Notes under the pieces: model-generated | What the model was told of the DNA's origin: nothing | Database searches by the model: none | Seen by the model: only the letters and a program-made list of their open reading frames with translations | Made by a program: the position numbers and the translations under genes | In this document: in pieces, positions 13,966 through 45,465 of the stretch | How positions within the stretch are numbered: position 1 is the first letter of the stretch | Layout: every line of letters starts with the position of its first letter | From: Macrostomum lignano | Taxonomy: Eukaryota | Direction of reading: 5' to 3' | DNA length: 64,000 nt | Assembly (NCBI GenBank): GCA_002269645.1 | Contig: NIVC01000266.1 | Span: 1 to 64,000, forward strand

Positions 13966-14629
13966 GATTTTACCGGTATATCTGCAAAAGCTCATTACAA
14001 ATTTTAGTTTTATTTACGTATTGTAATTTTTTAGTATAAAATGTTGATTGATGCATTTACTCGATTTAATAAAAGTATACGCTTTAGTATACAATAAAAA
14101 ATACAATACATTGACATTACAAAACTGCTGCAATTAAACTTATGATTTATGATTCGACAATTTGAAGAAACCGCGCATATACCACTCAATGAATAAGTAG
14201 TGCAGTTTGTTTCTACAGTAAAATGAAGAAGACGTGAGGTCTTTAACTGTTTTTTGGAATTTTTGGTATATAGGCGACGGATCGGATATATTCGTTGTAC
14301 AAAAATGGTAAAAAAAGTAAAAAATTAATATGAGCATCATTTGATCGGAAATAAATCTGACATGCTCTGCTTAACACACAAAAGTTGGAAGATATTAAAG
14401 ATATTGGAAGAACATATTTCTAAGGAAGGCACCGTATATATAAGTAATATTTTTAGTGGAAGCAATATTGGATAAAAATTCCATGTGTATAAATAAACCG
14501 AATGGATAATGTAACAGTTTTTAGCACCTACAAAATAAAAGTCTTTAAGTCTTTGCTCGTTGTCGCCGAATAAAATATAAAAAATCGAAAAAACAATCAA
14601 TTAAAAAAGTCCGAGCCAAAAACTTCCCG

Positions 14630-15183
14630 CTAGCCGACAAAAATCGCCGCCAATTCGCTGTTCAGCTTCAGGAGATTTCGCACCGATTTGAACTGCATCG
14701 CGTGACTCGCGCAGGATTCTGAAATTTGATTTTTTGCATTTATTATGCCGATTTTTCCTCTCGCTACTACTAACAGTAGAGTCTAAGAAATCGTCACTGG
14801 TAAAAAAGGCCTCAACTCACCAGCCGTGGCCGCCTCGGAGTTCACCGTGCTGGGGGCGGCGGCCATGACGGCGCGGCTTAACTCTGGCGTCATGCCTACC
14901 AGGCCGTGCAAAGCGGTTTCCATGGCGACAGCATCGATCAGGGAGTCGCCGTCGGATCTGCTTGACATGCGCTGTTAGGAATAGGAGTGTTGGTTTCTGC
15001 GTATCAGCTACGAGTCTGCAAGTGCAAATAGGCGGAATCCAAGCCTGGGGGATCCTCACCGTCATAGCGTCTCTCAGGATTGCTTCGGCACCGTCTGGGC
15101 AGCAAAGCAGAGCGGCTGCGATGTGCAGCCAGCGGGGGTCGATGCGGCCGCTGCCTGACTGGAACGGAGCGGGGATGACTGTC

Positions 15184-15240
<57 letters not shown>

Positions 15241-18028
15241 GCAGAACCGCACCCAGTCGAAGATGTCAAACACGAGTCGCATCCAGGACTCCAGCGGCCC
15301 GGGCAGGGCGGCCTCCGCTGCCAGCTCGTGCGGACACAGCAGCTTGGGCGGCCCAGGCGTCAGTCGGTTCAACAGCTGCACTGCCTGGTCGTACCCACCG
15401 TCTTTGTCTTCGCCGCAGTCATTCTGGTCGCCTGCAGACGCTGAGGCTGGTAGCAGGCGTCGGAACAGGCGACGCAGACCGCTCAGCGGGAAGCCGAGGT
15501 GGCGGAGGCCGCGACGGCGAGCCGCTTTGAACAGCAGGACGTCCGTGTAGGAATGGTCGCTCACTGGCAGGCCGGCGTGCCTGGAGATTCGTTATGAGAG
15601 AGGACAACAGCCAATCAGCGAGCGCGGAGGATGGGGTGGGCGTCGCGGGTTAAAAATGAGGGACTTCACTGAATATACTACTATTAAAGACGGCAAATGA
15701 GTACATCCAATGTCTTTAAAATTCTTTACCTAGCCAGGAGATCGCGGACATTGTTGGCGTAAAGCTGTGGATTGGCGCGCTCTTCAGCCGACGGATGATA
15801 CACAGGTAAGAACTGCAGCGGCAGGTTGATTGGGAATGAAGATTGGGGACAGGAAAGCCTCATTACAAAACGGGTTTCAAGTTTGGTTCAGGGTGGAATT
15901 CCAGGTGTGGGTTCAGGACCGGTTCTCAGGTGTGGGTTCAGGACCGGTTCTCAGGTGTGGGTTCAGGACCGGTTCTCAGGTGTGGGTTCAGGACCGGTTC
16001 TCAGGTGTGGGTTCAGGACCGGTTCTCAGGTGTGGGTTCAGGACCGGTTCTCAGGTGTGGGTTCAGGACCGGTTCTCAGGTGTGGGTTCAGGACCGGTTC
16101 TCAGGTGTGGGTTCAGGACCGGTTCTCAGGTGTGGGTTCAGGACCGGTTCTCAGGTGTGGGTTCAGGACCGGTTCTCAGGTGTGGGTTTATGAACATTTA
16201 GTATTAAGCTATTAAGATTAAGCTACCTGCACTGTTGCGAATTACTGTGTCTATACCGGTACAAACCTCAACGTGCAGCTCAGAGTAGACCCGAGAGCCG
16301 CACCTGAAGATCATATGGAACCTGCAAATGACGGGATATGATATCATTTTAATTGGGATATGATGGCTTACGATGGGATAAATATCCCCCCCCGATCTAC
16401 TACTCACATGGAGGGCCCGTCAACAGCCCAGCACTGCAGCTGCAGGGGATCCCGATGCCGCACCAGCACCGGCTGCACCGGGACGCCGGGAGCGAAGGCG
16501 CCCAGACGGAAGCCGATCAGCGCCCCGCCATTGGTGCACGTGCCTTCGGGGAAGACCAGCAGCTGGCGGAAGCCTCCGCCATTCAGGCAGCTGCGCGCCC
16601 TGTCTACAATTTCCTCGGCCGCTTTGGCGCGCATCCGGCGATTGTCCCGGTACACCACCACCGCCTCGCCTGCTGGCACCATCACTGCGGGACAGGGCAA
16701 GTGGGGGCTGTGTACTGCCGGCTATTGGGGGCTGTGAACTGCCGGGTATTGGGGGCTGTGAACTGCCGGATATTGGGCTTTGAACTGCTGGCTATTGGGG
16801 GCTGTGAACTGCCGGGTATTGGGCTGTGAACTGCCAGGTATTGGGGACTGTGAACTGCCGGCTATTGGGGGCTGTGAACTGCCGGCTATTGGGGGCTGTG
16901 AACTGCCGGCTATTGGGGGCTGTGAACTGCCGGCTATTGGGGGCTGTGAACTGCCGGCTATTGGGGGCTGTGAACTGCCGGCTATTGGGGGCTGTGAACT
17001 GCCGGCTATTGGGGCTGTGAACTGCCAGGTATTGGGGACTGTGAACTGCCGGCTATTGGGGGCTGTGAACTGCCTGGAGGTGTTGTTGAAAGACCCTATT
17101 TAAGACTGTTTACAGTGACTAATAGGGACGTGCTTGCAAAAACTATTAATAAGCACACCATTATAAAAGAAATTCTTCGGCGCCTTGGTCACCGGAGCGA
17201 GCATCGGGCGCTGGCAGAAGAACACCACCGTGTCAGTCAGAGAGGTGTGCGGCGCCGCCACCAGCAGAGGCGCCTCGCGGACACTGGCGCGCCGGCCTTT
17301 CAGGTGAATTCGCTGGTAGCCGCCCACGAACGCCCCATGCGGCCGATGTTGAGCAGCAGGTGATCCGCCACCCAGCTGGATATTGGGGTGTAAAGGTACT
17401 CTTTTTTCCTGTAGGTAGCAGCCTTTGCAATGTGCATTTTTATGCAAAGCTGTGCAAAGCTCCAGCGACCTCCCCAATGTACACTGCATTCCCGACCAAC
17501 CCCGCTTCCCAATGTACATTCCACTCCAAACCAACCCCACCTCCCGAATGTACACTCCACTCCCGACCAACCCCACCTCCCCAATGTACACTCCACTCCA
17601 GACCAACCCCACCTCCTCAATGTACACTCCATGTAACAGGTAGGATTTTGTGTCCATCCTGCCTGCACCTTCTGCTCACGTCGGATAACAAAGAATTGAA
17701 CTCGAAGCACGGTTTTTCTGGGCCCAGGCTGCTGCGGCCACCCCCAAAAACCTCACCTCCGCCAAGGAGACAGAGGCGCGGTGGCTTTGCCCCCAATCTG
17801 GGTGACAAAAGACACCAGGAAAGCCAAGGCCAGCGACAGGATCAGCAGAAGCAGCCGCACGGGGAACAGCAGCAAGCCGAGCAGGGGCACAGTCAGATAG
17901 TGGTACCAGAAGAAGCCCGCCCGATGGTAAAACGGATTGAACGGCCGAGGCGGCAGAGGCAGCGAGCAGACGCAGGTGTCGGCCGTGTCTGCCGTGACGG
18001 CCGAGTCACCGCTGGACGACGGCTGCCC
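14630..18028 (-). CDS. LPCAT: Lysophosphatidylcholine acyltransferase LPCAT1/2-like with degenerate EF-hand C-terminus, ~524 aa; one apparent 1-nt frameshift; no genomic ATG in the first exon
   Basis: Exons 18028-17757, 17375-17159, 16684-16408, 16321-16267, 15812-15730, 15580-15253, 15158-15060, 14971-14821, 14718-14630; all GT-AG. Phases are consistent after adding one base in the C4 run at 17333-17336. Motifs [17 protein letters not shown] (HxxxxD), [52 protein letters not shown]. Confidence 0.92.
15180..15243. repeat. (GACA)n in an LPCAT intron
   Basis: Directly visible. Confidence 0.95.
15898..16190. repeat. 25-bp minisatellite AGGTGTGGGTTCAGGACCGGTTCTC (~11 copies) in an LPCAT intron
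   Basis: Near-perfect tandem copies. Confidence 0.95.
16703..17075. repeat. 24-bp minisatellite GCTATTGGGGGCTGTGAACTGCCG in LPCAT intron 2
   Basis: Tandem copies directly visible. Confidence 0.95.
17469..17631 (+). repeat. 36-bp minisatellite GACCAACCCCACCTCCCCAATGTACACTCCACTCCA in LPCAT intron 1
   Basis: About 4.5 copies. Confidence 0.93.
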
Positions 18029-18171
18029 CTGAAAGACGGCGGCGGCGGCGTCAACAGAGATTGTTGCGGCTGATGCGAGTAGTCTAGCACGATTATTCTC
18101 TAACAATATTTTAAATCGATTTTGTCTGGTCCAGTACTGCAGCTTTTTACATTAGAATGAGGGTTATTTAT

Positions 18172-18740
18172 GAGTGGAATTTACATTGGGGAGGTAGGGT
18201 TGGTAGGGAATGGAGTGTACATTGGGGAGGTGGGGTTGGTCTGGAGTGGAGTGTACATTGGGGAGGTGGGGTTGGTCTGGAGTGGAGTGTACATTGGGGA
18301 GTAGGGTTGGTCTGGAGTGGAGTGTACATTGGGGAGTAGGGTTGGTCGGGAGTGGAGTGTACATTGGAGAGGTGGATTTGGTCTGGAGTGGAGTGTACAT
18401 TATATTAGGGAGGTGGGGTTGGTCGGGAATGGAGTGTACATTGGGGAGGTGGGGTTGGTCTGGAGTGGAGTGTACATTGGGGAGTAGGGTTGGTCGGGAG
18501 TGGAGTGTACATTGGAGAGGTGGATTTGGTCTGGAGTGGAGTGTACATTATATTAGGGAGGTGGGGTTGGTCGGGAATGGAGTGTACATTGGGGAGGTGA
18601 GTTCGTCGGGAGCGAGTGTACATTGGGGGTGGGGTTGGTCGGGAGTGGAGTGTACATTGGGAAGGTGGATTTGGTCTGGAGTGGAGTGTACATTGGGGAG
18701 TGGGGTTGGTCAGGAGTGGAGTGTACATTGGAGAGGTGGG
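18172..18740 (-). repeat. Same 36-bp minisatellite in inverted orientation, upstream of LPCAT exon 1
   Basis: Unit TGGAGTGGAGTGTACATTGGGGAGGTGGGGTTGGTC is the reverse complement of the 17469-17631 unit; about 16 copies. Confidence 0.93.
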
Positions 18741-19251
18741 GTGATAATTTCAATTGACTACTAAAGTAATATCTGTAGTCTGAATTGCTGAAACAATCGG
18801 TGAAATATGGTAATATTTATCAATCATAAAATGATGTAGCCTTTGGTTATAGAGGCTACATTAATATCCGCAGTTATCCTGTATATTTGCAAAGAAAACG
18901 TCAGCATTGCAACACGCAATTTTCAGGTTGCATTATTACTGTCGCCTTAGGATAAAAAAGAAGTGAACAAAAGTTACGCACAGGTAAATTCAGATTAAGT
19001 GCCAGCGGAGTGTTTAAGATAGAATAAATTCAGACGAATAACGAAAGAAAATACAAAAAGGTTTTTATAAATAAAATTAAGGCATTTGTATCAGCGCTGG
19101 ATAGCACCACAGATAATATAGAATGACTATGATAATATAGGTTTATGCATTAGCCGTGATTTAGCTTAAATTTTTGTTTTAACTTGCCAATTCTTAAATA
19201 GTCGGGAATTGCTAAACTGAAGTTCAAATAGAAAAAACAATTTCGGGACAC

Positions 19252-19278
19252 ACAAGAGGTCCCGGGTTCGAACTCGGA
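19252..19278 (+). other. Isolated tRNA T-arm / Pol III B-box-like fragment
   Basis: GAGGTCCCGGGTTCGAACTCGG; no convincing A box or cloverleaf. Confidence 0.25.
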
Positions 19279-19454
19279 AAATTAATTCAGGGTTTATTGC
19301 ATAATAGAAAATCTACGCATCAATACATAGAGGTGCTGCATTGCAATCTGGAAAATATATAAAAAAATTACAGGTAAGCACACAAACTGTGCTGCTACTC
19401 TACAGTATCTGGCACACTTGGCCAGATTACACAATCCTATCTATCCAGTGAGAT

Positions 19455-20010
19455 AGGGCCGGATTCTCAGGTGTTGGGGTTCAGTGCCGGATTCTCAGGT
19501 GTTGGGGTTCAGGGCCGGATTCTCAGGTGTTGGGGTTCAGTGCCGGATTCTCAAGTGTTGGGGTTCAGTGCCGGATTCTCAGGTGTTGGGGTTCAGGGTC
19601 AGAATCTTCAGGTGCTAGGGTTCAGGTTTTAGTTCAGGGTCAGATCCTCAGATGTTGGGGTTCAGAGTCAAATTCCTCAGGTGCTAGGGTTCAGGGTCAG
19701 ATTCTCAGGTGCTAGGGTTCAGGTTTTAGTTCAGGGTCGGATTCCTCAGGTGCTTGGGTTCAGGTTTTAGTTCAGGTCGGATTCCTCAGGTGTTGGGGTT
19801 CAGGGTCAGAATCCTCAGGTGCTAGGGTTCAGGTTTTAGTTCAGGTCGGATTCCTCAGGTGCTAGGGTTCAGGTTTTAGTTCAGGTCGGATTCCTCAGGT
19901 GCTAGGGTTCAGGTTTTAGTTCAGGTCGGATTCCTCAGGTGCTAGGGTTCAGGGTCAGAATCCTCAGGTGCTAGGGTTCAGGTTTAGTTCAGGTTCGGAT
20001 TCTCTGGTTT
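19455..20010. repeat. Composite ~28-38-bp minisatellite (GGATTCTCAGGTGTTGGGGTTCAG / GCTAGGGTTCAGGTTTTAGTTCAGG)
   Basis: Tandem copies. The CTCAGGTG..GGGTTCAG core is shared with 15898-16190. Confidence 0.9.
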
Positions 20011-20108
20011 CAGTTTTTCAGCTTTGATACGCGGAACAAGTGTCAGACGATGTTAACTCAATAAAAATTCAAATATTCAAACAAATATCAGTGTAACTGT
20101 CCCAGAGC

Positions 20109-22491
20109 TCAGACCAGGTAGACAGTATCTATGCAGGAGAAGCCCGTGGCAACTCCGCCCTCGTCCGTAAACGCTGATTTCGTTCTCAACACGTGACCAG
20201 CCGAGCAGTTCAATCGCTCAGAGTTGTTCTTAGCCACCAGAGCGCCGTAGATGCCCAGCTCGGAGATCGCAGACACGCACAGCGGCATCTCCGGCCGGCG
20301 GGACAGCCGCTGATCGGCTTTGAGCATCAGCGACACCTGCTGCTGAGGCCGGATGCGCCGCATCAGGATGTACGCGGCCGACTGTCGGGTTGTCAGGCGG
20401 CTGGCGAAGTCCACCACGTCGCGGCCGTAGATATTGTTGCCGCCGCCTTCTCGCTGCGGCTTCAGTACGAAGTCTTCGGGGTCGGCCAGCAGCCAGCGGT
20501 GCGCTCTGCGGGCATCGAATGAAATGGATGCTGTGCGGAGGAATATGCAGCAGAATTAGCTGCAGCTCAAACCGAAACTGAAACCGAAACGATGATCCAA
20601 ATTAAAATCAAAGATAGAAACGAAACCGAAACCGAATCTGAAACTAAAGCCAAAACCAAAACTCAAACTACATGTAAACCGGAAACCGAAACTAAAACTA
20701 AATCTGAAACCCGAAACTGAAACTAAACCCAAAACTGAAACTGAAAAATAACACGATATACCGAAACTCAAAATAAACCAAAAACCGAAACCGAAGCTAA
20801 ATTCAAAAACTGAAAACTGAACCCAAAACCTAAAAACTAAAACCTAAAACCTGAGCTCACCTCGAGTCGCTCAGCACGCATTGATCAACAAACGTGGCCT
20901 CAACTTTGGCGCTCTTCCCCGGCAGATAGCGCGCCACGGCGCCGGGTTCGCAGAGCGCCGCCTGTACAGCCTTGGTGTTGGCCAGCATGTAGGCCAGGCT
21001 CGGACACTTGATGGCCCGCGATCGCTCCATCAGCAGCTTGGCGCTCCAGGCCACGCCGGCCGGGTCGGAGAAGTGATCGGGCGAGTAGCCGTGCCGGTAG
21101 TACACAATGGCCACCTCCTGGTCAGCCAGGTACAGCCGGCCGGAGCTCTCCTCCAGTCGGGCCGAGCTGGCAATCTGGTCGAAGCTCCGACGCAGAATCT
21201 GCGGCACGTGAACTGGCGAATCTGACGACGCGTCGGCGGCATAGATTTCGGCTTCCAGTGTTCGCTGGTCGAAAATATTTCGCTCGTCTGGCGACACTAC
21301 GAACAGGATGGCGGCTTCCGGCCGGCCGTACAGCTTGAAGGCCTGGATGAAGGCTTCGCCGAAGGTCTCGGCTGGCCGGTTGTCGGGCAACCGGTGGGCC
21401 AGCTGGCGCTCGCTGACACCGGCGGCCGACATCACCTGGCGGTGCACAGTCGACAGGCGCTGGGCCAGGCCGCCGAAGCTGGATGCCATCAGGTTGATTT
21501 CCACCTGCGATTGTTTTGAAAGGAGAGATGCCAGATCCATTGCTTCCAAATTCAAAATCTCACCCTGCAGACTTTCTGAGATTCAAAATCTCACCTTTAA
21601 GAGATATTTGGAGCTTCAAAGTCTGATCTTGAAGATTTTCTGGGCTTCAAAGTCTGACCTTGAAGATTTTCTGGGCTTCAAAGTCTGACCTTGAAGATTT
21701 TCTGGGCTTCAAAGTCTGACCTTGAAGATTTTCTGGGCTTCAAAGTCTGACCTTGAAGATTTTCTGGGCTTCAAAGTCTGACCTTGAAGATTTTCTAGGC
21801 TTCAAAGTCTGACCTTGAAGATTTTCTAGGCTTCAAAGTCTGACCTTGAAGATTTTCTGGGCTTCAAAGTCTGACCTTGAAGATTTTCTGGGCTTCAAAG
21901 TCTGACCTTGAAGATTTTTAGAGCTTTAAAATATTTTCCTGGAGCCACCAGAAAATGCCACAATAGGTAAAAACTGCAGAGTTACATTATCCCAAATATT
22001 TTAATTCCTACAGACTTTGTATGCCAATGCAACCCCAACCCCCTCAACCACCCTCGCACCTGTTTAAGCCCGGCCTCTTCATCCAGCATATAGTCGGCTC
22101 GATTCAAAGCCAAAGTGATTGGCTGGTCAGCGCCAGACTGCCGGACAGTTTGGTACATGTCCCACAGGGCGGACAGGAACGAGTCCGACTCGGCCGCAGG
22201 TGGGATCACCCGGCACAGGAAGTTGTGATCCCGGGACACCCGGTGGTACAGCGAGTTGAACAGGGCCTGCAGCTCAACTGCTTGGTTGAACGCCTCCTTG
22301 GAGAAGGAGGACGGCACCAGGGTGATTGGCGCCATCATGCAGCGGTCGGGGGCGGCGGAACCAGACGAAGAGGATGCCGGATTGTCTTTTAGTAGCAGGC
22401 CGTTCATGCAGGCCAGGTCTCTGGCCAGACTGGACAGGCGGGCCTGCTGGCTTCCCGTCAGCCCGCTAGAAGGGTTGCGCCTGTGCTGCTG
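20109..22491 (-). CDS. GSS: Eukaryotic glutathione synthetase, ~491 aa; conserved N-terminus extends upstream of the first genomic ATG (22407)
   Basis: Exons 22491-22060, 21504-20861, 20505-20109; phases 0/2; 1473 nt. Motifs MAPITLVPS, LNRADYM, KQVEINLMASSFGGL, ERNIFDQ, VYYRHGYSP, SRAIKCP, FVLKPQREGGGNNIYG, AYILMRRIRP, ISELGIYG, GHVLRTK, EGGVATGF. Confidence 0.96.
20570..20853. repeat. Degenerate AAAC(C/T)(G/A)-type low-complexity repeat filling GSS intron 2
   Basis: Iterations of AAACCGAAACT and AAAACCT. Confidence 0.85.
21590..21925. repeat. 31-bp minisatellite CCTTGAAGATTTTCTGGGCTTCAAAGTCTGA in GSS intron 1
   Basis: Period 31 (21661/21692). Confidence 0.95.
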
Positions 22492-22589
22492 CTGCGGGCG
22501 GGCGAATGAGTTTTAGTTGCTATGGAGACGGCTGGGATGGCAAGGCGGGTAGGGTAGCGACCATAGAATTCTTGGGAGAGTGAGAAGAC

Positions 22590-24115
22590 AGAGTGACAGT
22601 GACAGGAAGAGGAGAGTGACGGACAGATTGACTGTAAGAGGAGAGTGACGAACAGAGTGACAGTAACAGGAGAGTAACAGGAAGAGGAGAGTGACGGACA
22701 GAGTGACAGGAAGACGAGAGTGCCGGAGAGAGTGACAGTAAGAGGAGAGTGACGAACAGAGTGACAGTAAAAGGAGAGTGACGAACAGAGTGACAGGAAG
22801 AGTAGAGTGACGGACAGAGTGACAGAAAGAGGAGAGTGACGGACAGAGTGACAGGAAGACGAGAGTGCCGGAGAGAGTGACAGTAAGAGGAGAGTGCCGG
22901 AGAGAGTGACAGTAAGAGGAGAGTGACGAACAGAGTGACAGTAAAAGGAGAGTGACGAACAGTGACAGGAAGAGGAGAGTGACGGACAGAGTGACAGGAA
23001 GAGGAGAGTGACGGACAGAGTGACAGAAAGGAGAGTAACGGACAGAGTGACAGGAAGAGGAAAGTGACGGACAGAGTGACAGTAACAGGAGAGTAACAGG
23101 AAGAGGAGAGTGACGGACAGAATGACAGGAAGACGAGAGTGCCGGAGAGAGTGACAGTAAGAGGAGAGTGACGAACAGAGTGACAGTAAAAGGAGAGTGA
23201 CGAACAGAGTGACAGAAGAAGAGAGTGACAGAGTGACAGGAACAGGAGAGTGACGGACAGAGTGACAGGAAGACAGGAAGAGGAGAGTGACGGACAGAGT
23301 GACAGAAAGGAGAGTAACGGACAGAGTGACAGAAAGAGGAGAGTGACGGACAGAGTGACAGGAAGACGAGAGTGCCGGAGAGAGTGACAGTAAGAGGAGA
23401 GTGCCGGAGAGAGTGACAGTAAGAGGAGAGTGACGAACAGAGTGACAGTAAAAGGAGAGTGACGAACAGTGACAGGAAGAGGAGAGTGACGGACAGAGTG
23501 ACAGGAAGAGGAGAGTGACGGACAGAGTGACAGAAAGGAGAGTAACGGACAGAGTGACAGGAAGAGGAAAGTGACGGACAGAGTGACAGTAACAGGAGAG
23601 TAACAGGAAGAGGAGAGTGACGGACAGAATGACAGGAAGACGAGAGTGCCGGAGAGAGTGACAGTAAGAGGAGAGTGACGAACAGAGTGACAGTAAAAGG
23701 AGAGTGACGAACAGAGTGACAGAAGAAGAGAGTGACAGAGTGACAGGAACAGGAGAGTGACGGACAGAGTGACAGGAAGACAGGAAGAGGAGAGTGACGG
23801 ACAGAGTGACAGAAAGGAGAGTAACGGACAGAGTGACAGGAAGAGGAAAGTGACGGACAGAGTGACAGGAAGAGGAGAGTGACGGACAGTGACAGGAAGA
23901 GAGTGACGGACAGAGTGACAGGAAGAGGAGAGTGACGGACAGAGTGACAGGAAGAGAGTGACGGACAGAGTGACAGGAAGAGGAGAGTGACGAACAAAGT
24001 GACAGGAAGAGGAGAGTGACGGACAGAGTGACAGGAAGAGGAGAGTGACAGGAGGAGGAGAGTGACAGGTAGGAGAGTGACGAACAAAGTGACAGAAAGA
24101 GGAGGGTGACAAGAA
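22590..24115. repeat. Purine-rich ~23-29-bp minisatellite (GAGTGACGGACAGAGTGACAGGAAGAGGA) with a 507-bp higher-order duplication
   Basis: Identical variant strings recur at 22861/23368 and 23221/23728. Confidence 0.93.
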
Positions 24116-24469
24116 GCATTAACAGTCACTATATTTAAATTGGTCAAGCCAAACTAACATAATCAAGGACAAAGAAATTAATTCTAGACAGAATGTTTGT
24201 ATTTTTGGGGTTGCACGCAAAATAGTCTTTGTCAGTATATTTCTAGTTACCAGACTGAGCCTCGGACAAAGGAAAATGCAACCGGATATTTCTGTCAACA
24301 TTACGTAATAAATACGCGAGAGTCAATTATGAATTATGACAGTGCGGATTTCATACGCATTATAAAATGTACAAGTTTTCACTAGCAAAATGCTGCGTTT
24401 ACGAGTGAATGAGAGGCCAACAAGCTGGGTTGCAACAGCATGAGTGTAATATAATATAAGCCGTCAGAA

Positions 24470-24870
24470 ATCCCTAGCTATTCTAGCCAATTAGAAAACG
24501 TCTCGCTTTTCTAGCCGATTAGAGAACGTCTAACTTGTCTAGCCAATGAGAGGACGGCTAGCTTTTCTAGCCAATCAGATAAATCCTAGCTTTTCTAGCC
24601 AACTAGAGAATGCCTCGCCTTTTCTAGCCAATGAGAGGATATCTAGCTTTTCTAGCCAATCAGAGAACTCCTAGCTTTTCTAGCCAATTAGAGAATGCCT
24701 CGCTTTTCTAGCCAATGAGAGGATATCTAGCTTTTATAGCTAATTAGAGAACTCCTAGCTTTTGTAGCCAATCAGAGGACGCTTAGCTTTTCTAGCCAAT
24801 TAGAGAACGTCTGACTTTTCTAACCAATTACAGAACGCTTGACGCTAAGCTGCTCCAGCCAATCAAAGAC
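24470..24870 (+). repeat. ~29-bp CCAAT-box minisatellite (TTTTCTAGCCAATCAGAGAACTCCTAGC) abutting the ABT1 stop codon
   Basis: About 13 degenerate copies, each with AGCCAAT(C/T/G)AG or a close variant. Confidence 0.9.
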
Positions 24871-24880
24871 CAGCAAAATA

Positions 24881-25892
24881 TCAAGATTTCCCTCGCCCAC
24901 CTCCTAGCAGTTGTGCCAAAAATGTAGGATTATTAACGGCCTGCAACTCGGGATCGTTGTTGCCCTTGCGGCTCCGCCGTTCGCGTCGACGCCGCTGTTC
25001 AACCCGCTGCAACTCCGGCAAAGGTCGAAACTGATCGCCCTTGGCTTGCTTAGCTCGCTCCTGAGATTTCGACTGCTCCAAGGATTCCTTGTAGAGCTTG
25101 CCGATCCGTCTAGCTTGCTGAATCTCCATTGCCAGGCGCTTATTTCTAACGGCTTTCTCGTTGGCCTCTCTATAGGTGATGTCGGTCCAGGCAAAGCCGG
25201 GCAGGTAGCGCAGATTCCACAGCTGGCCAGCCCACGGCTTTTTCTTGTCGGCTACTTCGGTGGCGTTCAAAGAGGCGACGCAACGCTTTGCGTCTGATCG
25301 GCGAAGGAATTCGGCCCAGCCTTCGCTGTACAGCCGCCAGCGCTTGCGGGCCGATGCTTCTTCGACCTTTGCGTGGTAAAAATGCAGGGAAAGAAGTGCT
25401 GATGTTAAAAAGCAATCCAGCCAATTAAGAAAAAAATTAACAAAATCCAACCCAATGAGAACACAGCAAGCGAAATCCAGCCAATCAGAACACAATAAAG
25501 CAAAATCCATCCAATCAGAACACAGCAAGCAAAATCCAGCCAATCAGAACACAGCAAGCAAAATCCAGCCAATCAGAACACAGTAAAGCAATTAGATTAC
25601 AGTACCATTCGAACCAATCAGATTTGAGTAGCATTTCAACCAATCAGAGCAGAGTACTAAAAAGGCAGCTTTAAAAACTAACCTGCAAAAAAACTCGCCC
25701 TAACTTTCCATATGGCGAGAGGTGCTCCCGAACCAGTTTCACCGTCATACCGTGCGGTACGCTGCTCAGATACACAATTCCAGGCTTTAGCGACTTCCCA
25801 GTTGAGGATTTGGGGAGTTCCTCCTTGAGCTCCTCTTCCATAGGCTCGGCTGCTTCGTCTGCTGACATGCCGCTTTGGGGATTAGTGGTCAT
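24881..25892 (-). CDS. ABT1: Activator of basal transcription 1 / Esf2 (RRM, pre-rRNA processing), 231 aa
   Basis: Exons 25892-25683 and 25366-24881, phase 0, AAG acceptor. Motifs PGIVYLSSVPHGM, YGKLGRVFLQ, YSEGWAEF, AKRCVASLN, LWNLRYLPGFAW. Confidence 0.94.
25410..25650 (+). repeat. ~29-bp CCAAT-box minisatellite (AAATCCAGCCAATCAGAACACAGCAAGC) in the ABT1 intron
   Basis: Tandem copies directly visible. Confidence 0.9.
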
Positions 25893-25944
25893 GAATTGGG
25901 ATCCAGAGTTGCTAAGCTGCTTCCAAATATTAGTTTGTTGGGAT

Positions 25945-26100
25945 TCTTTGTGGGCGGTTTTGGATAATTTGGAGATTCCTGGATTCCTGAATAGTTTTGG
26001 GATTTCTGGGTGGTTTTGGGATTTCTGGATGGTTTTGGGATTCCTGGAAAGTGTGGGAATTTGGTTTTGGGATGTCTAGGTGTTTTTGGCATTTCTAATT
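25945..26100. repeat. TTTTGGGATT-type degenerate repeat between DDX51 and ABT1
   Basis: Several TTTTGGGAT(T) units. Confidence 0.75.
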
Positions 26101-26294
26101 GGTTTTGCGATCAATGAGTAAGAGTAAAAAAGTCGAGCCATTTCTCACAGTACAGCCAAAAAATGCATATGAAAATTGTTGGCTAGGCTGACAATTTCAG
26201 TTATATAATTAGTTAAAGTGAAATGCCTCACAGGGGGGACCAGATAATTATATTCCAACAGTTTCCTTTCAAATGGAAGATCGAAAAACAAAAA

Positions 26295-29200
26295 TCAATC
26301 GTCAACTTCTTTTGATTTGTCTTCTTTTGTCTTTCTCTTTTTCATGCTGCTTTTATTGGCAGTTTTCTTATTCTGATCTTTCGACTGGTCTTCGCTCGCA
26401 GCTTCGACCGCCGACTCGCCCGCCTTCTGCTCCTCGTGCAGCCGGTTCAGGGCAGTCTGGTACCTGGCCTCGTACCGCTTAGTCTTGCTGCCGTGCAGCC
26501 GAACCTCTCGTACTTGACGCCCGCCAGCGCTCAGCATCCGGCGGAAGTGCAGAACCTCGCGCCGCTCCAGCAGGGTGTACGCGGCTCCGGCTCGGCCGGC
26601 TCGCGCAGTGCGGCCGGCGCGGTGCACGTAGGTTCGGAGCGAGGCCGGCCGGTCGTAGCACACGACGGCATCTACGCTGGGCAGGTCCATGCCGCGGGCC
26701 ATGCTGTCCGAGCAGACCAGTACGGACAGTTGGCCGGTGGAGAAACGACGCAGGATGCGGGCTCGCTTGGGCACCTGCGGATTGGGGGAGGGAGATGGGT
26801 AAAAAATCCCAAAATCCCAAAAAGAAATCCCAAAACTCGATCGAAATCCCAAAAGCTCGAATCCCAAAAACTCGATTGAAATTCTCAAAACTCGATTGAA
26901 ATCCTAAAAACTCGATTTAAATCCCAAAAACTCGATTGAAATCCCAAAAAAACGATTGAAATCCTCAAAACTTTAAAAACTTCAAAAACTACAAAAGTTG
27001 AAATACTCAAATCCCAAAAACTCGATTGAAATCCTCAAAACTCGATTGAAATTCCTCAAAACTCGACCGAAATCCCAAAACTCGATCAAAATCCCAAAAG
27101 CTCGATTGAAATCCCAAAAACTCAAAATGCCTCAAGCCCGTAAAAGCGCGGAAGCAGGAAAATCCAGGAACATCAGCAGCACTGCTAGCAGTACTCACGG
27201 GCAGCCTGGCAGACACGGCCTCGCAGGTGACTCGCGGATCGGCAAAAAGTGTAATTAGCGAGGCCAGACGGTGCGCCGACTCGCGCGAGTTCGTGAAGCA
27301 AAGCACCCGGCTGCGGCCGAGGCCCAGCACCAGGTGGATGACAAACAGCGGCTTCTGAGACGGCTTGAGCTGCACGAAGAACTCGCTCAGACGACCGGGC
27401 GCGGCGGACACCTCCAGCTCCTTGTCGGACTCCGCCGTGGCAGTCAGCAGCAGCGGATTGTGCAGCCGGAATCGCTGGAGCAGCTCCGGGTTGTGGGTGA
27501 GGGTGGCGCTCAGCAGCAGCTTCTGAAGGTGCGGCGGCTTCGCGTGCAGCCACGAGTGGATGCTGGGGTGCGGCATCGGCCTGCTCAGATGAGGATTCGT
27601 AAGCAGATTCAGTAAGATTTATCTTATTCATATCCCATGTAATTTTGCCCGCGTGTCAAAATTTCTGTATCCAACCAGCACAGTTGTGATCTTACCCATA
27701 TTTTTGTACAAAGAAATCAATTTTTAAATTCCTATGCCAGATTAATTTGCTTAGTCCCAGATTCCAAGGATTCTTAGTCCCAGATCCTGGGGATTTCTAG
27801 TCCCAGATCCCGAGGATTTCTAGTCCCAGATCCCAGGGATTCCTAGTTCCAGATCCCGGGAATTCCTAGTCCCAGATCTCAGGGGTTTCTAGTCCCAGAT
27901 CCCAGGGGTTTCTAGTCCCAGATCCCGGGAATCCTAGTCCCAGATCCCAGGGGTTTCCAGTTCCAGATCCCATGAATTCCTAGTTCCAGATCCCAGGGGT
28001 TTCTAGTCCCAGACATACATGCGCAACCTCCAAAATTCGGTCGGCCATGCGACTTAGTTTTAACAAAAATGCGACATAGTTTTTGGCTAAAAATGCGAAT
28101 TACATGTAAAAAACCCTAGCGTAAGTAGCGTAAAGCAAAATTAACACTACTTTGGGTAAACGGCAAGAGTAACTATAACTGTCTTATTAAGTCAAAATGC
28201 CTCGTCAGCTACTTAGTACTACTACTTGGTATTTTTTTGGGTGGGCATTTTTGCGACTTCCTTGTTTGGCCGCCAAATCGGTCGGCCGGATCGGCCGACT
28301 CGGCCGACTGTTGCGCATGTATGGTCCCAGATACCGAGGATTTCTAGTCCCAGATCCCGGGAATTCCTAGTCCCAGATCCCAGGGATTTATAGTTCCAGA
28401 TCCCATGAATTCCTAGTCCCAGACTAGTTCCAGATCCCGGGAATTCCTAGTCCCAGATCCCAGGAATTCCTAGTCCCAGATCCCGGGAATTCCTAGTCCC
28501 AGATCCCGGGAATTCCTAGTCCCAGATCCCAGGGATTCCTAGTTCCAGATCCCGGGAATTCCTAGTCTCAGATCCCAGGGGTTCCTAGTCCCAGATACCA
28601 GGAATTCTTAGCCCTAAATACATCACGATTCACTTCTCTATCCATGATCCAATGCACCAAAGTACAATATCCATCCCAAATTCACATCACAGATTCCCAG
28701 TCTCCGAGTGTAAATCCATCCCTACCCAGATTCTAACACAGAGAAATAGAAACCCACACCCAAACTAAAACAGCATGCCAGTCCCAGATCATCACAAAGC
28801 TAATTAACAAGCTCCAAACCCCAGGCCTCACTTGTCCAGCAGCCGTTCCAGCAGTCCGAACCAATCCTGCTTCTGTTCGGCCATGACCCGATCTGCCTCA
28901 TCAATGATAAGCATGCGCAGCCTAGCCAGACTCAATCCCGGACAGTTGAGCAGGTGATCGGCCAGACGGCCGGGAGTGCAAATGACCAGATCGGCCAGAG
29001 GGCGGTAGCTGCCATCTGACATGAGGCGGACCAGCTGGTGCCGCTCCTTCTCCAGGCTGCGCTCGCCAACCAGCAGCTGGCAGCGAATCTGGCGGCGACA
29101 ACCGTCAGAGTCGGCTGCTCCCTCGGACAGAGCGGCCAGCAGCCGGAGGCAAACCTGGTGCACCTGACAAGCCAGGGTTAGGAAATTGAATGATGGGATT

Positions 29201-39949: not shown

Positions 39950-40830
39950 TTATAAACTTAGGAACTCACTCATAAACTCATGAACTCACTCATAAACTCA
40001 TAAAATCACTCATAAACTCATGAACTCACTCATAAACTCATGAACTCATTCATAAACTCATGAACTCACTCATAAACTCATGAACTCACTTATGAACTCA
40101 TGAACTCACTCATAAACTCATGAACTCACTCATAAACTCATGAACTCACTCATAAATTCATGAACTCATTCATAAACTCATGAACTCACTCATAAACTCA
40201 TGAACTCACTCATAAACTCATGAACTCACCCATAAACTCATGAACTCACTTATGAACTCATGAACTCATTCATAAACTCATGAACTCATTCATAAACTCA
40301 TGAACTCACTCATAAACTCATGAACTCACTCATAAACTCATGAACTCACTTATGAACTCATGAACTCACTCATAAACTCATGAACTCACTCATAAACTCA
40401 TGAACTCACTCATAAACTCATGAACTCATTCATAAACTCATGAACTCACTCATAAACTCATGAACTCACTCATAAACTCATGAACTCACCCATAAACTCA
40501 TGAACTCACTTATGAACTCATGAACTCATTCATAAACTCATGAACTCACTCATAAACTCATTAACTCATTCATAAACTCATGAACTCACTCATAAACTCA
40601 TGAACTCATTCATAAACTCATGAACTCACTCATAAACTCATGAACTCATTCATAAACTCATGAACTCATCCATAAACTCATGAACTCACTCATAAACTCA
40701 TGAACTCACCCATAAACTCATGAACTCACTTATGAACTCATGAACTCACTCATAAACTCATGAACTCACTTATGAACTCACTTATGAACTCATGAACTCA
40801 CTTATCAACTCATAAACTCATGACCTCACT
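39950..40830. repeat. 20-bp minisatellite CATAAACTCATGAACTCACT
   Basis: Directly visible. Confidence 0.96.
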
Positions 40831-41274
40831 TATGATTCCGTGAAATCATGAACCACATCAATCAATCACACCTGCAGCTGTAAGGGCCCTAAACTAATTT
40901 TAGTAGAAACTTTCTTTTTCGTCTACTTTAAGTAGTCAATACTGACCATTCCAAGAATAGATTTCAATCGCAAATCGACTACATTCTTCCTGTCAAGTTC
41001 ATTTGAGAAACTCCGCTGGGAAAACGTTTCGGGTAGTCTGTTGAATAATTAAAAAAATTTTTTTTAATTCTTTAAACTTTTGAGAATTTTGCTAACGAGT
41101 TGGTTTGAAATTTCCTAGAAATACTTGCACTAGAAAGCTTGCCGCATCATTAAGCTCCAAAAGTACTGACCACTAGGAGGAGCAGGTTGCAACAGTTCTC
41201 AGTTGATCCTGGCTCCCTCTCTCATTTCTCCCAGCCTCTGTTCTCCCCGTTTTCCTCTCCGCTCCAATCTCCCT

Positions 41275-42205
41275 TTCGATCTCCCATTCTCCCTCTCCCA
41301 TTCTCCCTCTCCCATTCTCCCTCTCCCATTCTCCCTCTCCCATTCTCCCTCTCCCATTCTCCCTCTCCCATTCTCCCTCTCCCATTCTCCCTCTCCCATT
41401 CTCCCTCTCCCATTCTCCCTCTCCCATTCTCCCTCTCCCATTCTCCCTCTCCCATTCTCCCTCTCCCATTCTCCCTCTCCCATTCTCCCTCTCCCATTCT
41501 CCCTCTCCCATTCTCCCTCTCCCATTCTCCCTCTCCCATTCTCCCTCTCCCATTCTCCCTCTCCCATTCTCCCTCTCCCATTCTCCCTCTCCCATCTCCC
41601 TCTCCTAATCTCCATCTCCCAGTATCCCTCTGCCATCTCCCTCTGCCATCTCCCTCTGCCAATCTCCGTCTGCCATTCTCCCTCCCCCATTATCCCTTTC
41701 CAAATATCCCTCTGCCATTCTCCCCCTTCCATTCTCCCTCTCCCACTCTCTCTCTCCCACTCTCCCTCTCCCACTCTCCCTCTCCCACTCTCCCTCTCCC
41801 ACTCTCCCTCTCCCACTCTCCCACTCCCACTCTCCCTCTCCTAATCTCCCTTTCCCAGTATCCCTCTGCCATCTCCCTCTGCCATCTCCCTCTTCCATTC
41901 TTCCTCTCCTATTCTCCCTCTCCCATTATCCCTTTCCAAATATCCCTCTGCCATTCTCCCTCTTCCATTCTTCCTCTCCTATTCTCCCTCTCCCATTATC
42001 CCTTTCCAAATATCCCTCTGCCATTCTCCCTCTCCCATTCTCCCTCTCCCATTCTCCCTCTCCCATTCTCCCTCTCCTAATCTCTCTCTCCCACTCTCCC
42101 TCTCCCAGTCTCCCTCTGCTAATCTCCCTCTCCTAATCTCCCTCTGCCATTCTCCCTCTCCTAATCTTCCTTTCCCAATATCCCTATCTCAATCTCCCTC
42201 TCCCG
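41275..42205. repeat. 14-bp polypyrimidine repeat CTCCCATTCTCCCT and degenerate variants, followed by (AC)n at 42241-42286
   Basis: Directly visible. Confidence 0.95.
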
Positions 42206-42239
42206 ATTTTACTTAAAGAAGCATTCTAAGAAAATTCCC

Positions 42240-42276
<37 letters not shown>

Positions 42277-42824
42277 GCACGCACACACAAATCGAATCAA
42301 TCCCCATTGTGAATCCTTGGCTCTGTCCCCTGTTGCAGCAGCGCTGATTGCATAACTGTCCCACCCTCTGACATATATATATACAGTATCCATAGAAAAG
42401 GGAAATATAGAAAGACAGAAGACTTCTGGGAAGAGAGCGGGAAGATCAGATATGCTTCAACCCTGATAAGCGGTGCTTTATTTACTGCCAAGCCGGCCAT
42501 AACTGTGACCGAAACTTCCACCACGCGCTGAAGGTTATTAGCCTCTGTAGGAGACGCCACCTCCATCCCGGATCCCACGCAACGTCCGCCTGTCGCTGTT
42601 GCTGGGATTTTTATTAAGAAGTTTCAAATCAAATAGCGGCATCTCTCTCTGTTCTTATCGACTCCGCCCCCACCGAACCGAATCTCTGACTGGCTGCCTG
42701 TCTACTGCTTGCCTTCTGCTGTCTTCATTCAATCGATAAGATGCTTTGATAGTCAGCTGGGGCAAGGAATATTGCCGCTTGCGTAATGGGGTGACTTCTG
42801 CCCATCCTGTCTCTGTCCCTCTGT

Positions 42825-42961
42825 GTCCGTCATCTGTCTGTTTGTGTCTGTAATCTCTGTCTGTGTCTGTCATCTCTGTCTGTCTGTATCTGTCATCTCT
42901 GTCTGTCTGTGTCTGTCATCTCTGTCTGTCTGTCTGTGTCTATCATCTCTGTCTGTCTGTC

Positions 42962-42994
<33 letters not shown>

Positions 42995-45050: not shown

Positions 45051-45465
45051 TCTGCCAGTCTCATCCCTCAACTCCCTTTTCCCTGACAGTCCCAGATTCT
45101 GCTAGAATAAATTTATTCACCCACTTCAGCTCCTCACACGGGCACCCACTTTCGCCCCATCCAAAGTTTGACCGCTTGATGAATTTCATTGAGCTCTCCG
45201 AGTTTCGAACTGGTCAAGAGATCCCTGCCGCCTCATCCCATCCAGCGCTGTTGACCCCACGTGCCCCCCCCCCCGTCTGAGCTCATTGACGCTTTAGGGA
45301 TTGATTTTATTTTCACTCTCAAAGCTCGAAAGTGTTGCTGCCCGAAAACGAGAAACCGCCAACGATTTCGGCCAGTAGGAACTCCGGTGGACCTTGACCT
45401 CGGATCGAATCGTCAGGCTCTTGTTGGAAATAAGTAATAGCCCGAGAAATGGGTGATGGATGCCT

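What the first reader, a model, noticed from the sequence alone, without database searches (positions are those of the whole stretch)
22405..22520. GSS conserved N-terminal helix lies upstream of its first ATG, behind a CAGCAGCAG phase-0 acceptor
Seen: reading upstream of ATG 22407 gives QQHRRNPSSGLTGSQQARLSSLARDLAC-MNGLLLK with no Met, and an in-frame TAA at 22515-22513. A branch-like ACTAAAAC and pyrimidine-rich CTCATTCGCCCGCCCGCAG precede 22491. Established: eukaryotic GSS has about 28 residues (LxxLAxxAxDxA) before the G-(V/L)-L-L motif. SL-AUG plus 22491 restores that length almost exactly. The tandem CAGs would all stay in frame. A weak alternative ATG|GTCGCT donor exists at about 22560.
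Basis: partly seen in the sequence, partly recalled or inferred. Interest (0 to 1): 0.7.

Follow-up and report, generated by a model that had tools for sequence, protein, structure and literature searches.

The report
Flatworm GSS start codon supplied by spliced leader
In this Macrostomum lignano flatworm gene for glutathione synthetase, the conserved first helix of the enzyme is encoded upstream of the first genomic ATG, so the start codon most likely comes from the AUG at the end of the trans-spliced leader, which is a known flatworm mechanism and not a new one.

Summary
The window is Macrostomum lignano scaffold NIVC01000266.1, in the same coordinates. It carries a 3-exon glutathione synthetase (GSS) gene on the minus strand.

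- **No genomic start codon.** From an in-frame TAA (22515-22513) to the first ATG (22407-22405) there is no Met.
- **The extension looks coding.** The 28 codons after the CAG acceptor (exon start 22491) encode the conserved N-terminal helix. They include the invariant Asp (human Asp24, a dimer-interface residue) and the A-[KR]-D-x-A motif.
- **The match is not chance.** The extension adds 9 bits to a GSS profile; 0 of 300 shuffles reach that.
- **Length fits.** Homologues have 27-38 residues (median 30) before the invariant Gly. SL-AUG joined at 22491 gives 31; starting at M22407 gives 2.
- **The leader ends in ATG.** The published 35-nt M. lignano spliced leader has a 3'-terminal ATG.
- **Database models agree.** UniProt models of two paralogues start, Met-less, exactly at QQHRR (22491). 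NCBI models are flagged 5'-partial.
- **A neighbour shows the same pattern.** The LPCAT-like gene downstream starts right after an acceptor with no ATG.

SL-junction reads could not be reached, so the junction itself is inferred. The mechanism has been known since Cheng et al. 2006. This is a new, well-supported member of a known kind, and of low interest.

The parts
22513..22515 (-). In-frame TAA that closes the GSS frame upstream. Any mRNA containing it cannot start the GSS frame before M22407.
22495..22517 (-). Branch-point-like ACTAAAAC / CTCAT followed by a pyrimidine-rich tract (65% Y in the 20 nt before the AG). There is no AG between 22519 and the acceptor.
22486..22494 (-). CAGCAGCAG tandem (NAGNAG-type) acceptors, all phase 0 with the GSS frame. 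The first AG (22493-22492) gives exon start 22491.
   Evidence: UniProt models start at the codon after the first CAG
22408..22491 (-). 28 codons (QQHRRNPSSGLTGSQQARLSSLARDLAC) with no genomic start codon. They encode the GSS N-terminal dimer-interface helix, including the invariant Asp25.
22405..22407 (-). First genomic ATG. It is Met29 of the extension-numbered protein and aligns to an internal hydrophobic column (M in 6/19 homologues, L in 8/19).
22060..22491 (-). GSS coding exon 1 (donor CAG|GTGCGA).
20861..21504 (-). GSS coding exon 2 (acceptor TCGCAG|, donor GAG|GTGAGC).
20109..20505 (-). GSS coding exon 3, including the TGA stop at 20111-20109.
22560..22564 (-). Rival element: ATG (22564-22562) followed by GTCGCT. 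This weak candidate cis donor would give a 70-nt intron to 22492.
22598..24110 (-). 1.5-kb CT-rich 29/58-nt tandem array filling most of the putative outron/intergenic space upstream of the acceptor. It has no ATG on the coding strand between 24119 and 22564.
17757..18028 (-). Comparison case in the same gene cluster: first coding exon of the LPCAT-like acyltransferase. It has no ATG and starts directly after TTTCAG| (AG at 18030-18029).

Best explanation
The GSS pre-mRNA of M. lignano is SL trans-spliced at the first CAG of a CAGCAGCAG run, giving exon start 22491. The 35-nt spliced leader ends in AUG. The junction ...UUGCAUG|CAGCAGCAC therefore puts that AUG in frame and creates the start codon of a 491-residue enzyme, MQQHRRNPSS...

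This enzyme carries the normal N-terminal helix that forms part of the dimer interface. The genomic ATG at 22407 is an internal Met.

Shown: the open frame, the lack of a genomic ATG, the significant conservation of the extension, the phase-0 acceptor, and Met-less database models starting at that codon.

From the literature: the SL ends in AUG, and flatworm SL AUGs are used as initiators.

Inferred: that trans-splicing actually occurs at 22491, and that ribosomes start at the SL AUG on this mRNA.
For: 1. **Species and leader.** The species is M. lignano. [quoted passage not shown]
2. **Conserved extension.** The extension adds +9.0 bits to a GSS profile, with 0/300 shuffles reaching that and 11/1500 random genomic ORF pieces reaching it. 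Asp25 is invariant in 19/19 homologues; Ala23 and Ala27 match 17/19.
3. **Functional importance of the helix.** Asp25 aligns to human Asp24. Human Asp24, with Ser42 and Arg221, makes inter-subunit contacts essential for activity and stability, and the human 11-30 helix packs on the partner's 212-236 helix. The partner Arg (Arg225 here) is invariant and present. AF2 predicts a helix over residues 13-29.
4. **Length.** There are 31 residues before the invariant Gly with SL-AUG at 22491, against 27-38 (median 30) in homologues. A start at M22407 would leave 2.
5. **UniProt models.** The models of two paralogues both begin at QQHRR, the codon after the first CAG.
6. **NCBI models.** They are 5'-partial and begin 15-18 nt further downstream. 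No annotated transcript therefore includes the TAA at 22515 or an upstream ATG exon.
7. **First AG after the branch region.** The first AG downstream of the branch-like region is the 22493-22492 AG.
8. **Neighbouring gene.** In paralogue locus L001, the NCBI CDS of the LPCAT-like gene (523 aa, partial) starts at the first base after TTTCAG|. This matches the published SL-acceptor motif [T/C]TNCAG, is in phase 0, and the exon has no ATG.
9. **Gene context.** Four same-strand genes lie together. The repeat-adjusted distance from the ESF2 stop to the acceptor is about 510 nt, under the published 1-kb operon criterion.
10. **Precedent.** SL-AUG initiation is documented in S. mansoni (Cheng et al. 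2006, cited). The terminal ATG of Macrostomum SLs has been called a likely start codon.
Against: - No SL-junction read, cDNA or peptide was accessible, so the junction is not directly seen.
- The acceptor hexamer CCGCAG lacks the T of the enriched [T/C]TNCAG motif. That motif is present at only 9551 of 21754 published sites (about 44%), so its absence is not disqualifying.
- The NCBI (Mlig_3_7) GSS models start at 22473 or 22476, not at an AG. That pipeline evidently did not set this 5' end from an SL-read peak.
- UniProt 5' ends are not always the productive acceptor. The UniProt LPCAT-like model starts 13 codons upstream of the NCBI acceptor start, although again right after an AG.
- Two upstream AGs with better pyrimidine tracts (exon starts 22531 and 22519) would put the SL AUG out of frame.
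- AF2 confidence for the helix is only about 58-60 pLDDT, from a 20-sequence alignment.
Confidence: 0.7

Rival explanations
1. Translation starts at the genomic ATG 22407. The upstream 84 nt are 5'UTR, either because the mRNA is not trans-spliced or because it is trans-spliced at an out-of-frame AG (22531, 22519, 22480 or 22465) so that the SL AUG opens a short uORF. The enzyme then lacks its first helix.
For: ATG 22407 is the only genomic ATG in any frame between 22564 and the body of the gene. Out-of-frame AGs with good pyrimidine tracts exist: 22531 gives MPSP*, 22480 gives MAQPF*. NCBI transcript models do not start at an acceptor.
Against: The extension is significantly GSS-like and keeps the invariant Asp and the A-[KR]-D-x-A motif. 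An untranslated leader has no reason to preserve these, or an open frame, in three copies. In human GS the equivalent helix and Asp24 are needed for dimer stability and activity. All 19 homologues start 27-38 residues before the Gly. Both annotations are 5'-partial, so their transcripts do not contain the TAA at 22515.
Confidence: 0.13
2. A cis-spliced upstream exon supplies the ATG. It could be the one-codon ATG|GTCGCT at 22564-22560 (70-nt intron), or a short exon upstream of the tandem array (24441-24403 CTC|GTAAAC or 24301-24251 CTG|GTAACT).
For: These are the only phase-0 ATG..GT combinations with any donor-like sequence in the 2.39 kb between the ESF2 stop and the acceptor.
Against: GTCGCT has C at +3 and +5, against the M. 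lignano consensus GT[G/A]AG. The distant candidates would add 13-17 unrelated residues, making the N-terminus longer than in any of the 19 homologues. Two independent transcript-based annotations contain no such exon and leave the CDS 5'-partial.
Confidence: 0.07
3. The mRNA starts upstream without an SL AUG, and translation initiates at a near-cognate codon inside the extension, for example CUG at Leu11 (GGG CUG ACG).
For: In-frame CUG codons at Leu11, Leu19, Leu22 and Leu26. This would also keep the conserved helix.
Against: There is no need for it in an organism whose SL delivers an AUG in frame. A start at Leu11 would give a shorter N-terminus (20 residues before the Gly) than any homologue (minimum 27). 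Near-cognate starts are usually inefficient (general knowledge).
Confidence: 0.05
4. The locus is a 5'-truncated pseudogene copy, or an assembly error removed the start codon.
For: M. lignano is a hidden polyploid with many duplicated loci. The neighbouring LPCAT-like gene in this very copy carries a 1-nt frameshift.
Against: The GSS frame is intact over 490 codons, with all invariant catalytic motifs. Three separately assembled copies share the same Met-less 5' end. The gene is represented in transcript-based annotations.
Confidence: 0.03

Closest known systems
[quoted passage not shown]
   Same: The SL ends in AUG. The acceptor is in phase with an ORF that has no genomic start codon. Conserved N-terminal residues lie upstream of the first genomic ATG. 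That study reported the SL AUG in frame with 28% of trans-spliced transcripts and more than 40 cDNAs that require it (as summarised in PMC9851317).
   Different: The species is a free-living macrostomid rather than a trematode, and the SL sequence differs. Use of the SL AUG is inferred here, not demonstrated by cDNA or translation assays.
SL trans-splicing and operons of Macrostomum lignano (Wudarski et al. 2017; Ustyantsev & Berezikov 2021, PMC8629364)
   Same: Same organism and same assembly (Mlig_3_7). There is a single 35-nt SL ending in ATG, the genes lie on the same strand, and the repeat-adjusted spacing is under 1 kb.
   Different: Those papers do not analyse SL-AUG-dependent ORFs. Whether this GSS is in their list of trans-spliced genes could not be checked. 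The acceptor CCGCAG only partly fits their enriched motif [T/C]TNCAG.
slORFs (ORFs created by SL addition; slORFfinder, PMC9851317)
   Same: This is an ORF whose start codon is provided by the leader.
   Different: slORFs are called from SL-junction reads plus ribosome footprints. Neither was available here.
Human glutathione synthetase (PDB 2HGS) and its N-terminal 11-30 helix
   Same: E = 1.1e-82, with the alignment covering query residues 17-488. Asp25 aligns to Asp24 and Arg225 to Arg221.
   Different: The human gene encodes its own ATG.
NAGNAG tandem acceptors
   Same: Three consecutive in-frame CAGs could give isoforms differing by one or two Gln.
   Different: Here the tandem would act at a trans-splice junction next to the start codon. 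Usage of the second and third CAG is untested.

Membership tests
Eukaryotic glutathione synthetase (ATP-grasp; Pfam PF03917 GSH_synth_ATP + PF03199 GSH_synthase) | Full-length similarity to characterised GSS, with both Pfam domains | tested here: met
   both domains are present on the identical UniProt entry, and 1899 homologues were found; 2HGS E = 1.1e-82, 5OES E = 3.2e-84.
Eukaryotic glutathione synthetase (ATP-grasp; Pfam PF03917 GSH_synth_ATP + PF03199 GSH_synthase) | Invariant motifs such as KPQREGGGNN and the ELG..G / GH.LR.K C-terminal motifs | tested here: met
   the invariant columns K374-N383, E441-G443 and G462/H463/L465/R466/K468 are all present.
Eukaryotic glutathione synthetase (ATP-grasp; Pfam PF03917 GSH_synth_ATP + PF03199 GSH_synthase) | N-terminal helix with the conserved Asp (human Asp24) 27-38 residues long before the invariant Gly | tested here: met
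   This is met only if the 28 codons upstream of ATG 22407 are translated.
SL-AUG-initiated flatworm mRNA (Cheng et al. 2006 type) | The organism's spliced leader ends in AUG | tested here: met
   Literature: PMC8629364 gives the SL as ...TTGCATG. PMC12582326 and PMC10468722 agree. No SL RNA gene is present in the window itself.
SL-AUG-initiated flatworm mRNA (Cheng et al. 2006 type) | A 3' splice acceptor in phase 0 with the ORF, an in-frame stop upstream, and no in-frame genomic ATG before conserved residues | tested here: met
SL-AUG-initiated flatworm mRNA (Cheng et al. 2006 type) | cDNA or RNA-seq reads with the SL joined at that acceptor | not testable with these tools
   No M. lignano transcript contigs could be reached. 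No gene-level SL table is held in the supplements. The only indirect support is Met-less UniProt models starting at the acceptor.
SL-AUG-initiated flatworm mRNA (Cheng et al. 2006 type) | Translation shown to start at the SL AUG (peptide, reporter or ribosome profiling) | not testable with these tools
   No proteomic or Ribo-seq data were available.
M. lignano operon (Ustyantsev & Berezikov 2021 definition) | Adjacent same-strand genes, the downstream gene SL trans-spliced, and a repeat-adjusted intergenic distance under 1 kb | tested here: inconclusive
   Same strand. From the ESF2 stop (24881) to the acceptor (22492) is 2389 nt; subtracting tandem arrays of 1513 and 366 nt leaves about 510 nt. 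The ESF2 poly(A) site and the SL status of GSS are unknown.

The most novel reading that the evidence does not exclude
Choice among the clustered acceptors may act as a switch. In-frame CAGs (22491/22488/22485) would give full-length, dimer-competent GSS with a variable N-terminal Gln count. Out-of-frame AGs (22531, 22519, 22480, 22465) would turn the SL AUG into a 4-56-codon uORF. That would leave only M22407, giving little protein or a helix-less protein. Trans-splice-site selection would then tune glutathione synthesis post-transcriptionally.
Probability: 0.08. Interest if true: 0.5.

Novelty: new member of a known kind. Interest (0 to 1): 0.25.

Why it matters
The main value is for annotation. 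Public records list this enzyme as 'partial' or Met-less (PAA86750.1/PAA86812.1, PAA81357.1, A0A1I8H5Z9, A0A1I8HJY0). The complete protein can be written by adding the leader's Met.

The same pattern appears in the neighbouring LPCAT-like gene. This suggests that many '5'-partial' M. lignano models are really SL-AUG-initiated genes. That matters for proteomics databases, for orthology and completeness scores, and for transgene design in this model flatworm.

No new mechanism is involved.

Tried and rejected
- **N-terminal-only homologue search.** A search with exon 1 alone (145 aa, with a leading M) returned nothing, not even the identical UniProt entry. I treat this as a limit of the word index, not as evidence.
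- **Contig look-ups.** The Met-less UniProt sequence has no contig on record.
- **Gene-level trans-splicing tables.** Supplements of PMC5730564, PMC8629364 and PMC5816591 hold nothing on Mlig005657, Mlig002428 or GSS. No paper mentions these gene ids. The Wasik et al. 2015 paper is not held, so how the UniProt/WormBase ParaSite models were built could not be checked.
- **SL RNA gene.** None is in the window at up to 3 mismatches, and there are no Rfam hits.
- **Paralogue comparison.** Comparing the extension with the outron is uninformative. The copies differ at only 3 positions: one synonymous and one Ala->Val in the extension, and one in the pyrimidine tract.
- **UniProt 5' ends as acceptor markers.** I considered using UniProt 5' ends as a general marker of SL acceptors. 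This is weakened by the LPCAT-like model, which starts 13 codons upstream of the NCBI acceptor start.

Full report
**What the window is**

A homologue search with the assembled protein returned a 100% identical, 490-residue UniProt entry named glutathione synthetase of Macrostomum lignano (A0A1I8H5Z9). NCBI members of the same cluster come from assembly GCA_002269645.1. One of the three genomic places carrying the gene, NIVC01000266.1 positions 14109-28473, is 100% identical to window 14109-28473. The window is therefore that scaffold in its own coordinates.

The region carries four genes on the minus strand: a DEAD-box helicase, an ESF2-like gene (NCBI CDS 25886-24881), GSS, and an LPCAT-like acyltransferase.

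**The gene**

GSS has three coding exons on the minus strand:

| Exon | Coordinates | Note |
|---|---|---|
| 1 | 22491 (or 22407) to 22060 | donor CAG\|GTGCGA |
| 2 | 21504-20861 | acceptor TCGCAG\|, donor GAG\|GTGAGC |
| 3 | 20505-20109 | stop TGA at 20111-20109 |

Both introns are filled with tandem repeats. The product has both GSS Pfam domains and all invariant motifs. It matches human GS (2HGS) at E = 1.1e-82.

**Check of the observation**

- The first ATG is at 22407-22405.
- The frame is open upstream to an in-frame TAA at 22515-22513, with no ATG in between.
- A branch-like ACTAAAAC and a pyrimidine-rich tract end in CAGCAGCAG (22494-22486).
- All three CAGs are phase-0 acceptors.
- A weak ATG|GTCGCT lies at 22564-22560.

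The other two frames of the 84-nt extension contain stops.

**Is the extension coding?**

In an alignment with 19 GSS homologues from vertebrates, insects, molluscs, annelids and a fungus, several conserved residues lie upstream of Met29, which is the 22407 ATG:

| Residue | Match in homologues |
|---|---|
| Ala23 | 17/19 |
| Arg24 (K/R) | 17/19 |
| Asp25 | 19/19 |
| Ala27 | 17/19 |

Met29 itself sits in an ordinary hydrophobic column (M in 6/19, L in 8/19).

A profile built from the 19 homologues scores the protein at 476.6 bits with the extension and 467.6 bits without it. Shuffled extensions give 468.6 ± 0.9, with a maximum of 473.5, and 0 of 300 reach the observed score. Of 1500 random stop-free 28-codon translations from the window, 11 reach it.

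Homologues have 27-38 residues before the invariant Gly, median 30. A Met joined at 22491 gives 31, while a start at 22407 gives 2. AlphaFold2 predicts a helix over residues 13-29, though only at pLDDT about 58-60.

Asp25 aligns to human Asp24. According to a 2026 preprint citing De Jesus et al. [quoted passage not shown] The same source reports that the human 11-30 helix packs against the partner's 212-236 helix in an obligate dimer. The partner arginine is invariant and present here as Arg225.

A protein starting at Met29 would lose all of this. I conclude that the extension is translated.

**Where the start codon comes from**

The M. lignano spliced leader is a single 35-nt sequence ending in ...TTGCATG. 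[quoted passage not shown] All reported flatworm SLs end in AUG, and Cheng et al. 2006 showed that S. mansoni uses that AUG as an initiator (cited). The Macrostomum genome paper PMC10468722 explicitly notes that the terminal ATG of the SL is a likely start codon.

Joining the SL at 22491 gives AUG|CAG CAG CAC..., in frame.

Between the TAA and the conserved helix, the in-frame AGs are the three tandem CAGs and two poor sites further in, at 22446 and 22443, which have only 35% pyrimidine upstream. The 22493-22492 AG is the first AG downstream of the branch-like region.

**Independent support from existing annotations**

- The UniProt models of two paralogues (A0A1I8H5Z9, A0A1I8HJY0) both begin, without Met, at QQHRR. 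That is the codon directly after the first CAG.
- The NCBI models (PAA86750.1/PAA86812.1 with 484 aa, PAA81357.1 with 485 aa) are flagged partial. They begin 18 and 15 nt further downstream.
- A 5'-partial call means the underlying transcripts include neither the TAA at 22515 nor any upstream ATG exon. This brackets the mRNA 5' end to 22512-22473 and argues against both the cis-exon rival and the upstream out-of-frame acceptors.

**A parallel case in the same cluster**

The first coding exon of the LPCAT-like gene downstream (window 18028-17757) has no ATG. In paralogue locus L001, the NCBI CDS (PAA81356.1, 523 aa, partial) starts at the first base after TTTCAG|. That matches the published SL-acceptor motif and is in phase 0. 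The pipeline that produced those models cuts transcripts at SL-read peaks. This looks like a data-defined SL site whose ORF also depends on the SL AUG.

**Caveats**

- No RNA read, cDNA or peptide could be reached.
- The GSS acceptor hexamer CCGCAG lacks the T of the enriched motif.
- The NCBI GSS models do not start at an AG. I suspect, as an inference only, that short SL-trimmed reads multi-map among the three near-identical copies.
- The UniProt LPCAT-like model starts 13 codons upstream of the NCBI acceptor start, although again right after an AG at 18071-18070. UniProt 5' ends are therefore suggestive but not proof.
- Two upstream AGs (exon starts 22531 and 22519) have better pyrimidine tracts. 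If used, they would put the SL AUG out of frame.

**Rivals**

- A start at M22407 is disfavoured by the conservation and by the role of the helix.
- An upstream cis exon is disfavoured for three reasons. Only seven ATGs occur on the coding strand in the 2.39 kb back to the ESF2 stop. The only phase-0 donors are weak (GTCGCT, GTAAAC, GTAACT). No annotation contains such an exon.
- Near-cognate initiation would give a shorter N-terminus than any homologue.
- A pseudogene or assembly error is unlikely, given an intact 490-codon frame in three copies.

**Comparison and novelty**

The locus works like the SL-AUG-initiated mRNAs described in S. mansoni in 2006, and it fits what is known of M. lignano trans-splicing. 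It meets all sequence-level criteria of that class. The two experimental criteria, junction reads and initiation at the SL AUG, could not be tested here.

This is a new, well-supported member of a known kind. Its value is for annotation rather than for new concepts.

Noticed in passing
window 18030-17757 (minus strand); L001 11233-11504: The LPCAT-like acyltransferase downstream of GSS has a first coding exon with no ATG. It begins right after TTTCAG| (GQPSSSGD...NPFYHR..., then a TM segment). The NCBI model of the paralogue (PAA81356.1, 523 aa, partial) starts exactly at that base. This is a second likely SL-AUG-dependent gene in the cluster. The UniProt model instead starts 13 codons upstream, just after another AG (18071-18070) that would be out of frame with the SL AUG.
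   Followed up: partly
window 17336-17333 (minus strand, exon 2 of the LPCAT-like gene): This copy has a run of 4 G where the paralogue copies L001 and L002 have 5 (ATGGGGCG vs ATGGGGGCG). The frame shifts and stops 10 codons later. This explains why NCBI calls only a 375-aa product from ATG 17204 here, against 523 and 420 aa in the other copies. It could be a homopolymer assembly error or a decaying duplicate.
   Followed up: partly
window 25919-25884 (minus strand): The NCBI ESF2-like CDS (229 aa) is also 5'-partial and starts at ACT 25886. However, a genomic in-frame ATG lies two codons upstream (25892-25890). A CAG| acceptor at 25919-25917 is also in frame with it. The true 5' end and start of this gene are therefore unclear.
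   Followed up: no
window 24473-24838 and 25414-25591: These tandem arrays have units containing CCAAT-box-like cores (GCCAATTAGAG / GCCAATCAGAAC on the plus strand). There are 13 copies between ESF2 and GSS and about 5 copies inside ESF2. They could be NF-Y-type promoter elements for GSS or just satellites.
   Followed up: no
window 18172-18742 and 17468-17631: The same 36-nt satellite (…CCAATGTACACTCCACTCC…) flanks exon 1 of the LPCAT-like gene in opposite orientations. The pre-mRNA could therefore pair across that exon. The arrangement is also present in paralogue L001 (the BLAST hits have opposite orientations).
   Followed up: no
window 21551-21918, 20590-20850, 19458-20002, 22598-24110: Nearly every intron and intergenic spacer of the cluster is filled with a different short-period tandem array. 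Array lengths differ between the three paralogous loci; for example, the CT-rich array upstream of GSS is about 1.5 kb here and shorter in L002.
   Followed up: partly
window 40001-48000: This stretch has very strong strand asymmetry of base composition (GC skew down to -0.70, AT skew down to -0.85). It is presumably further purine/pyrimidine-biased satellites. It was not examined.
   Followed up: no
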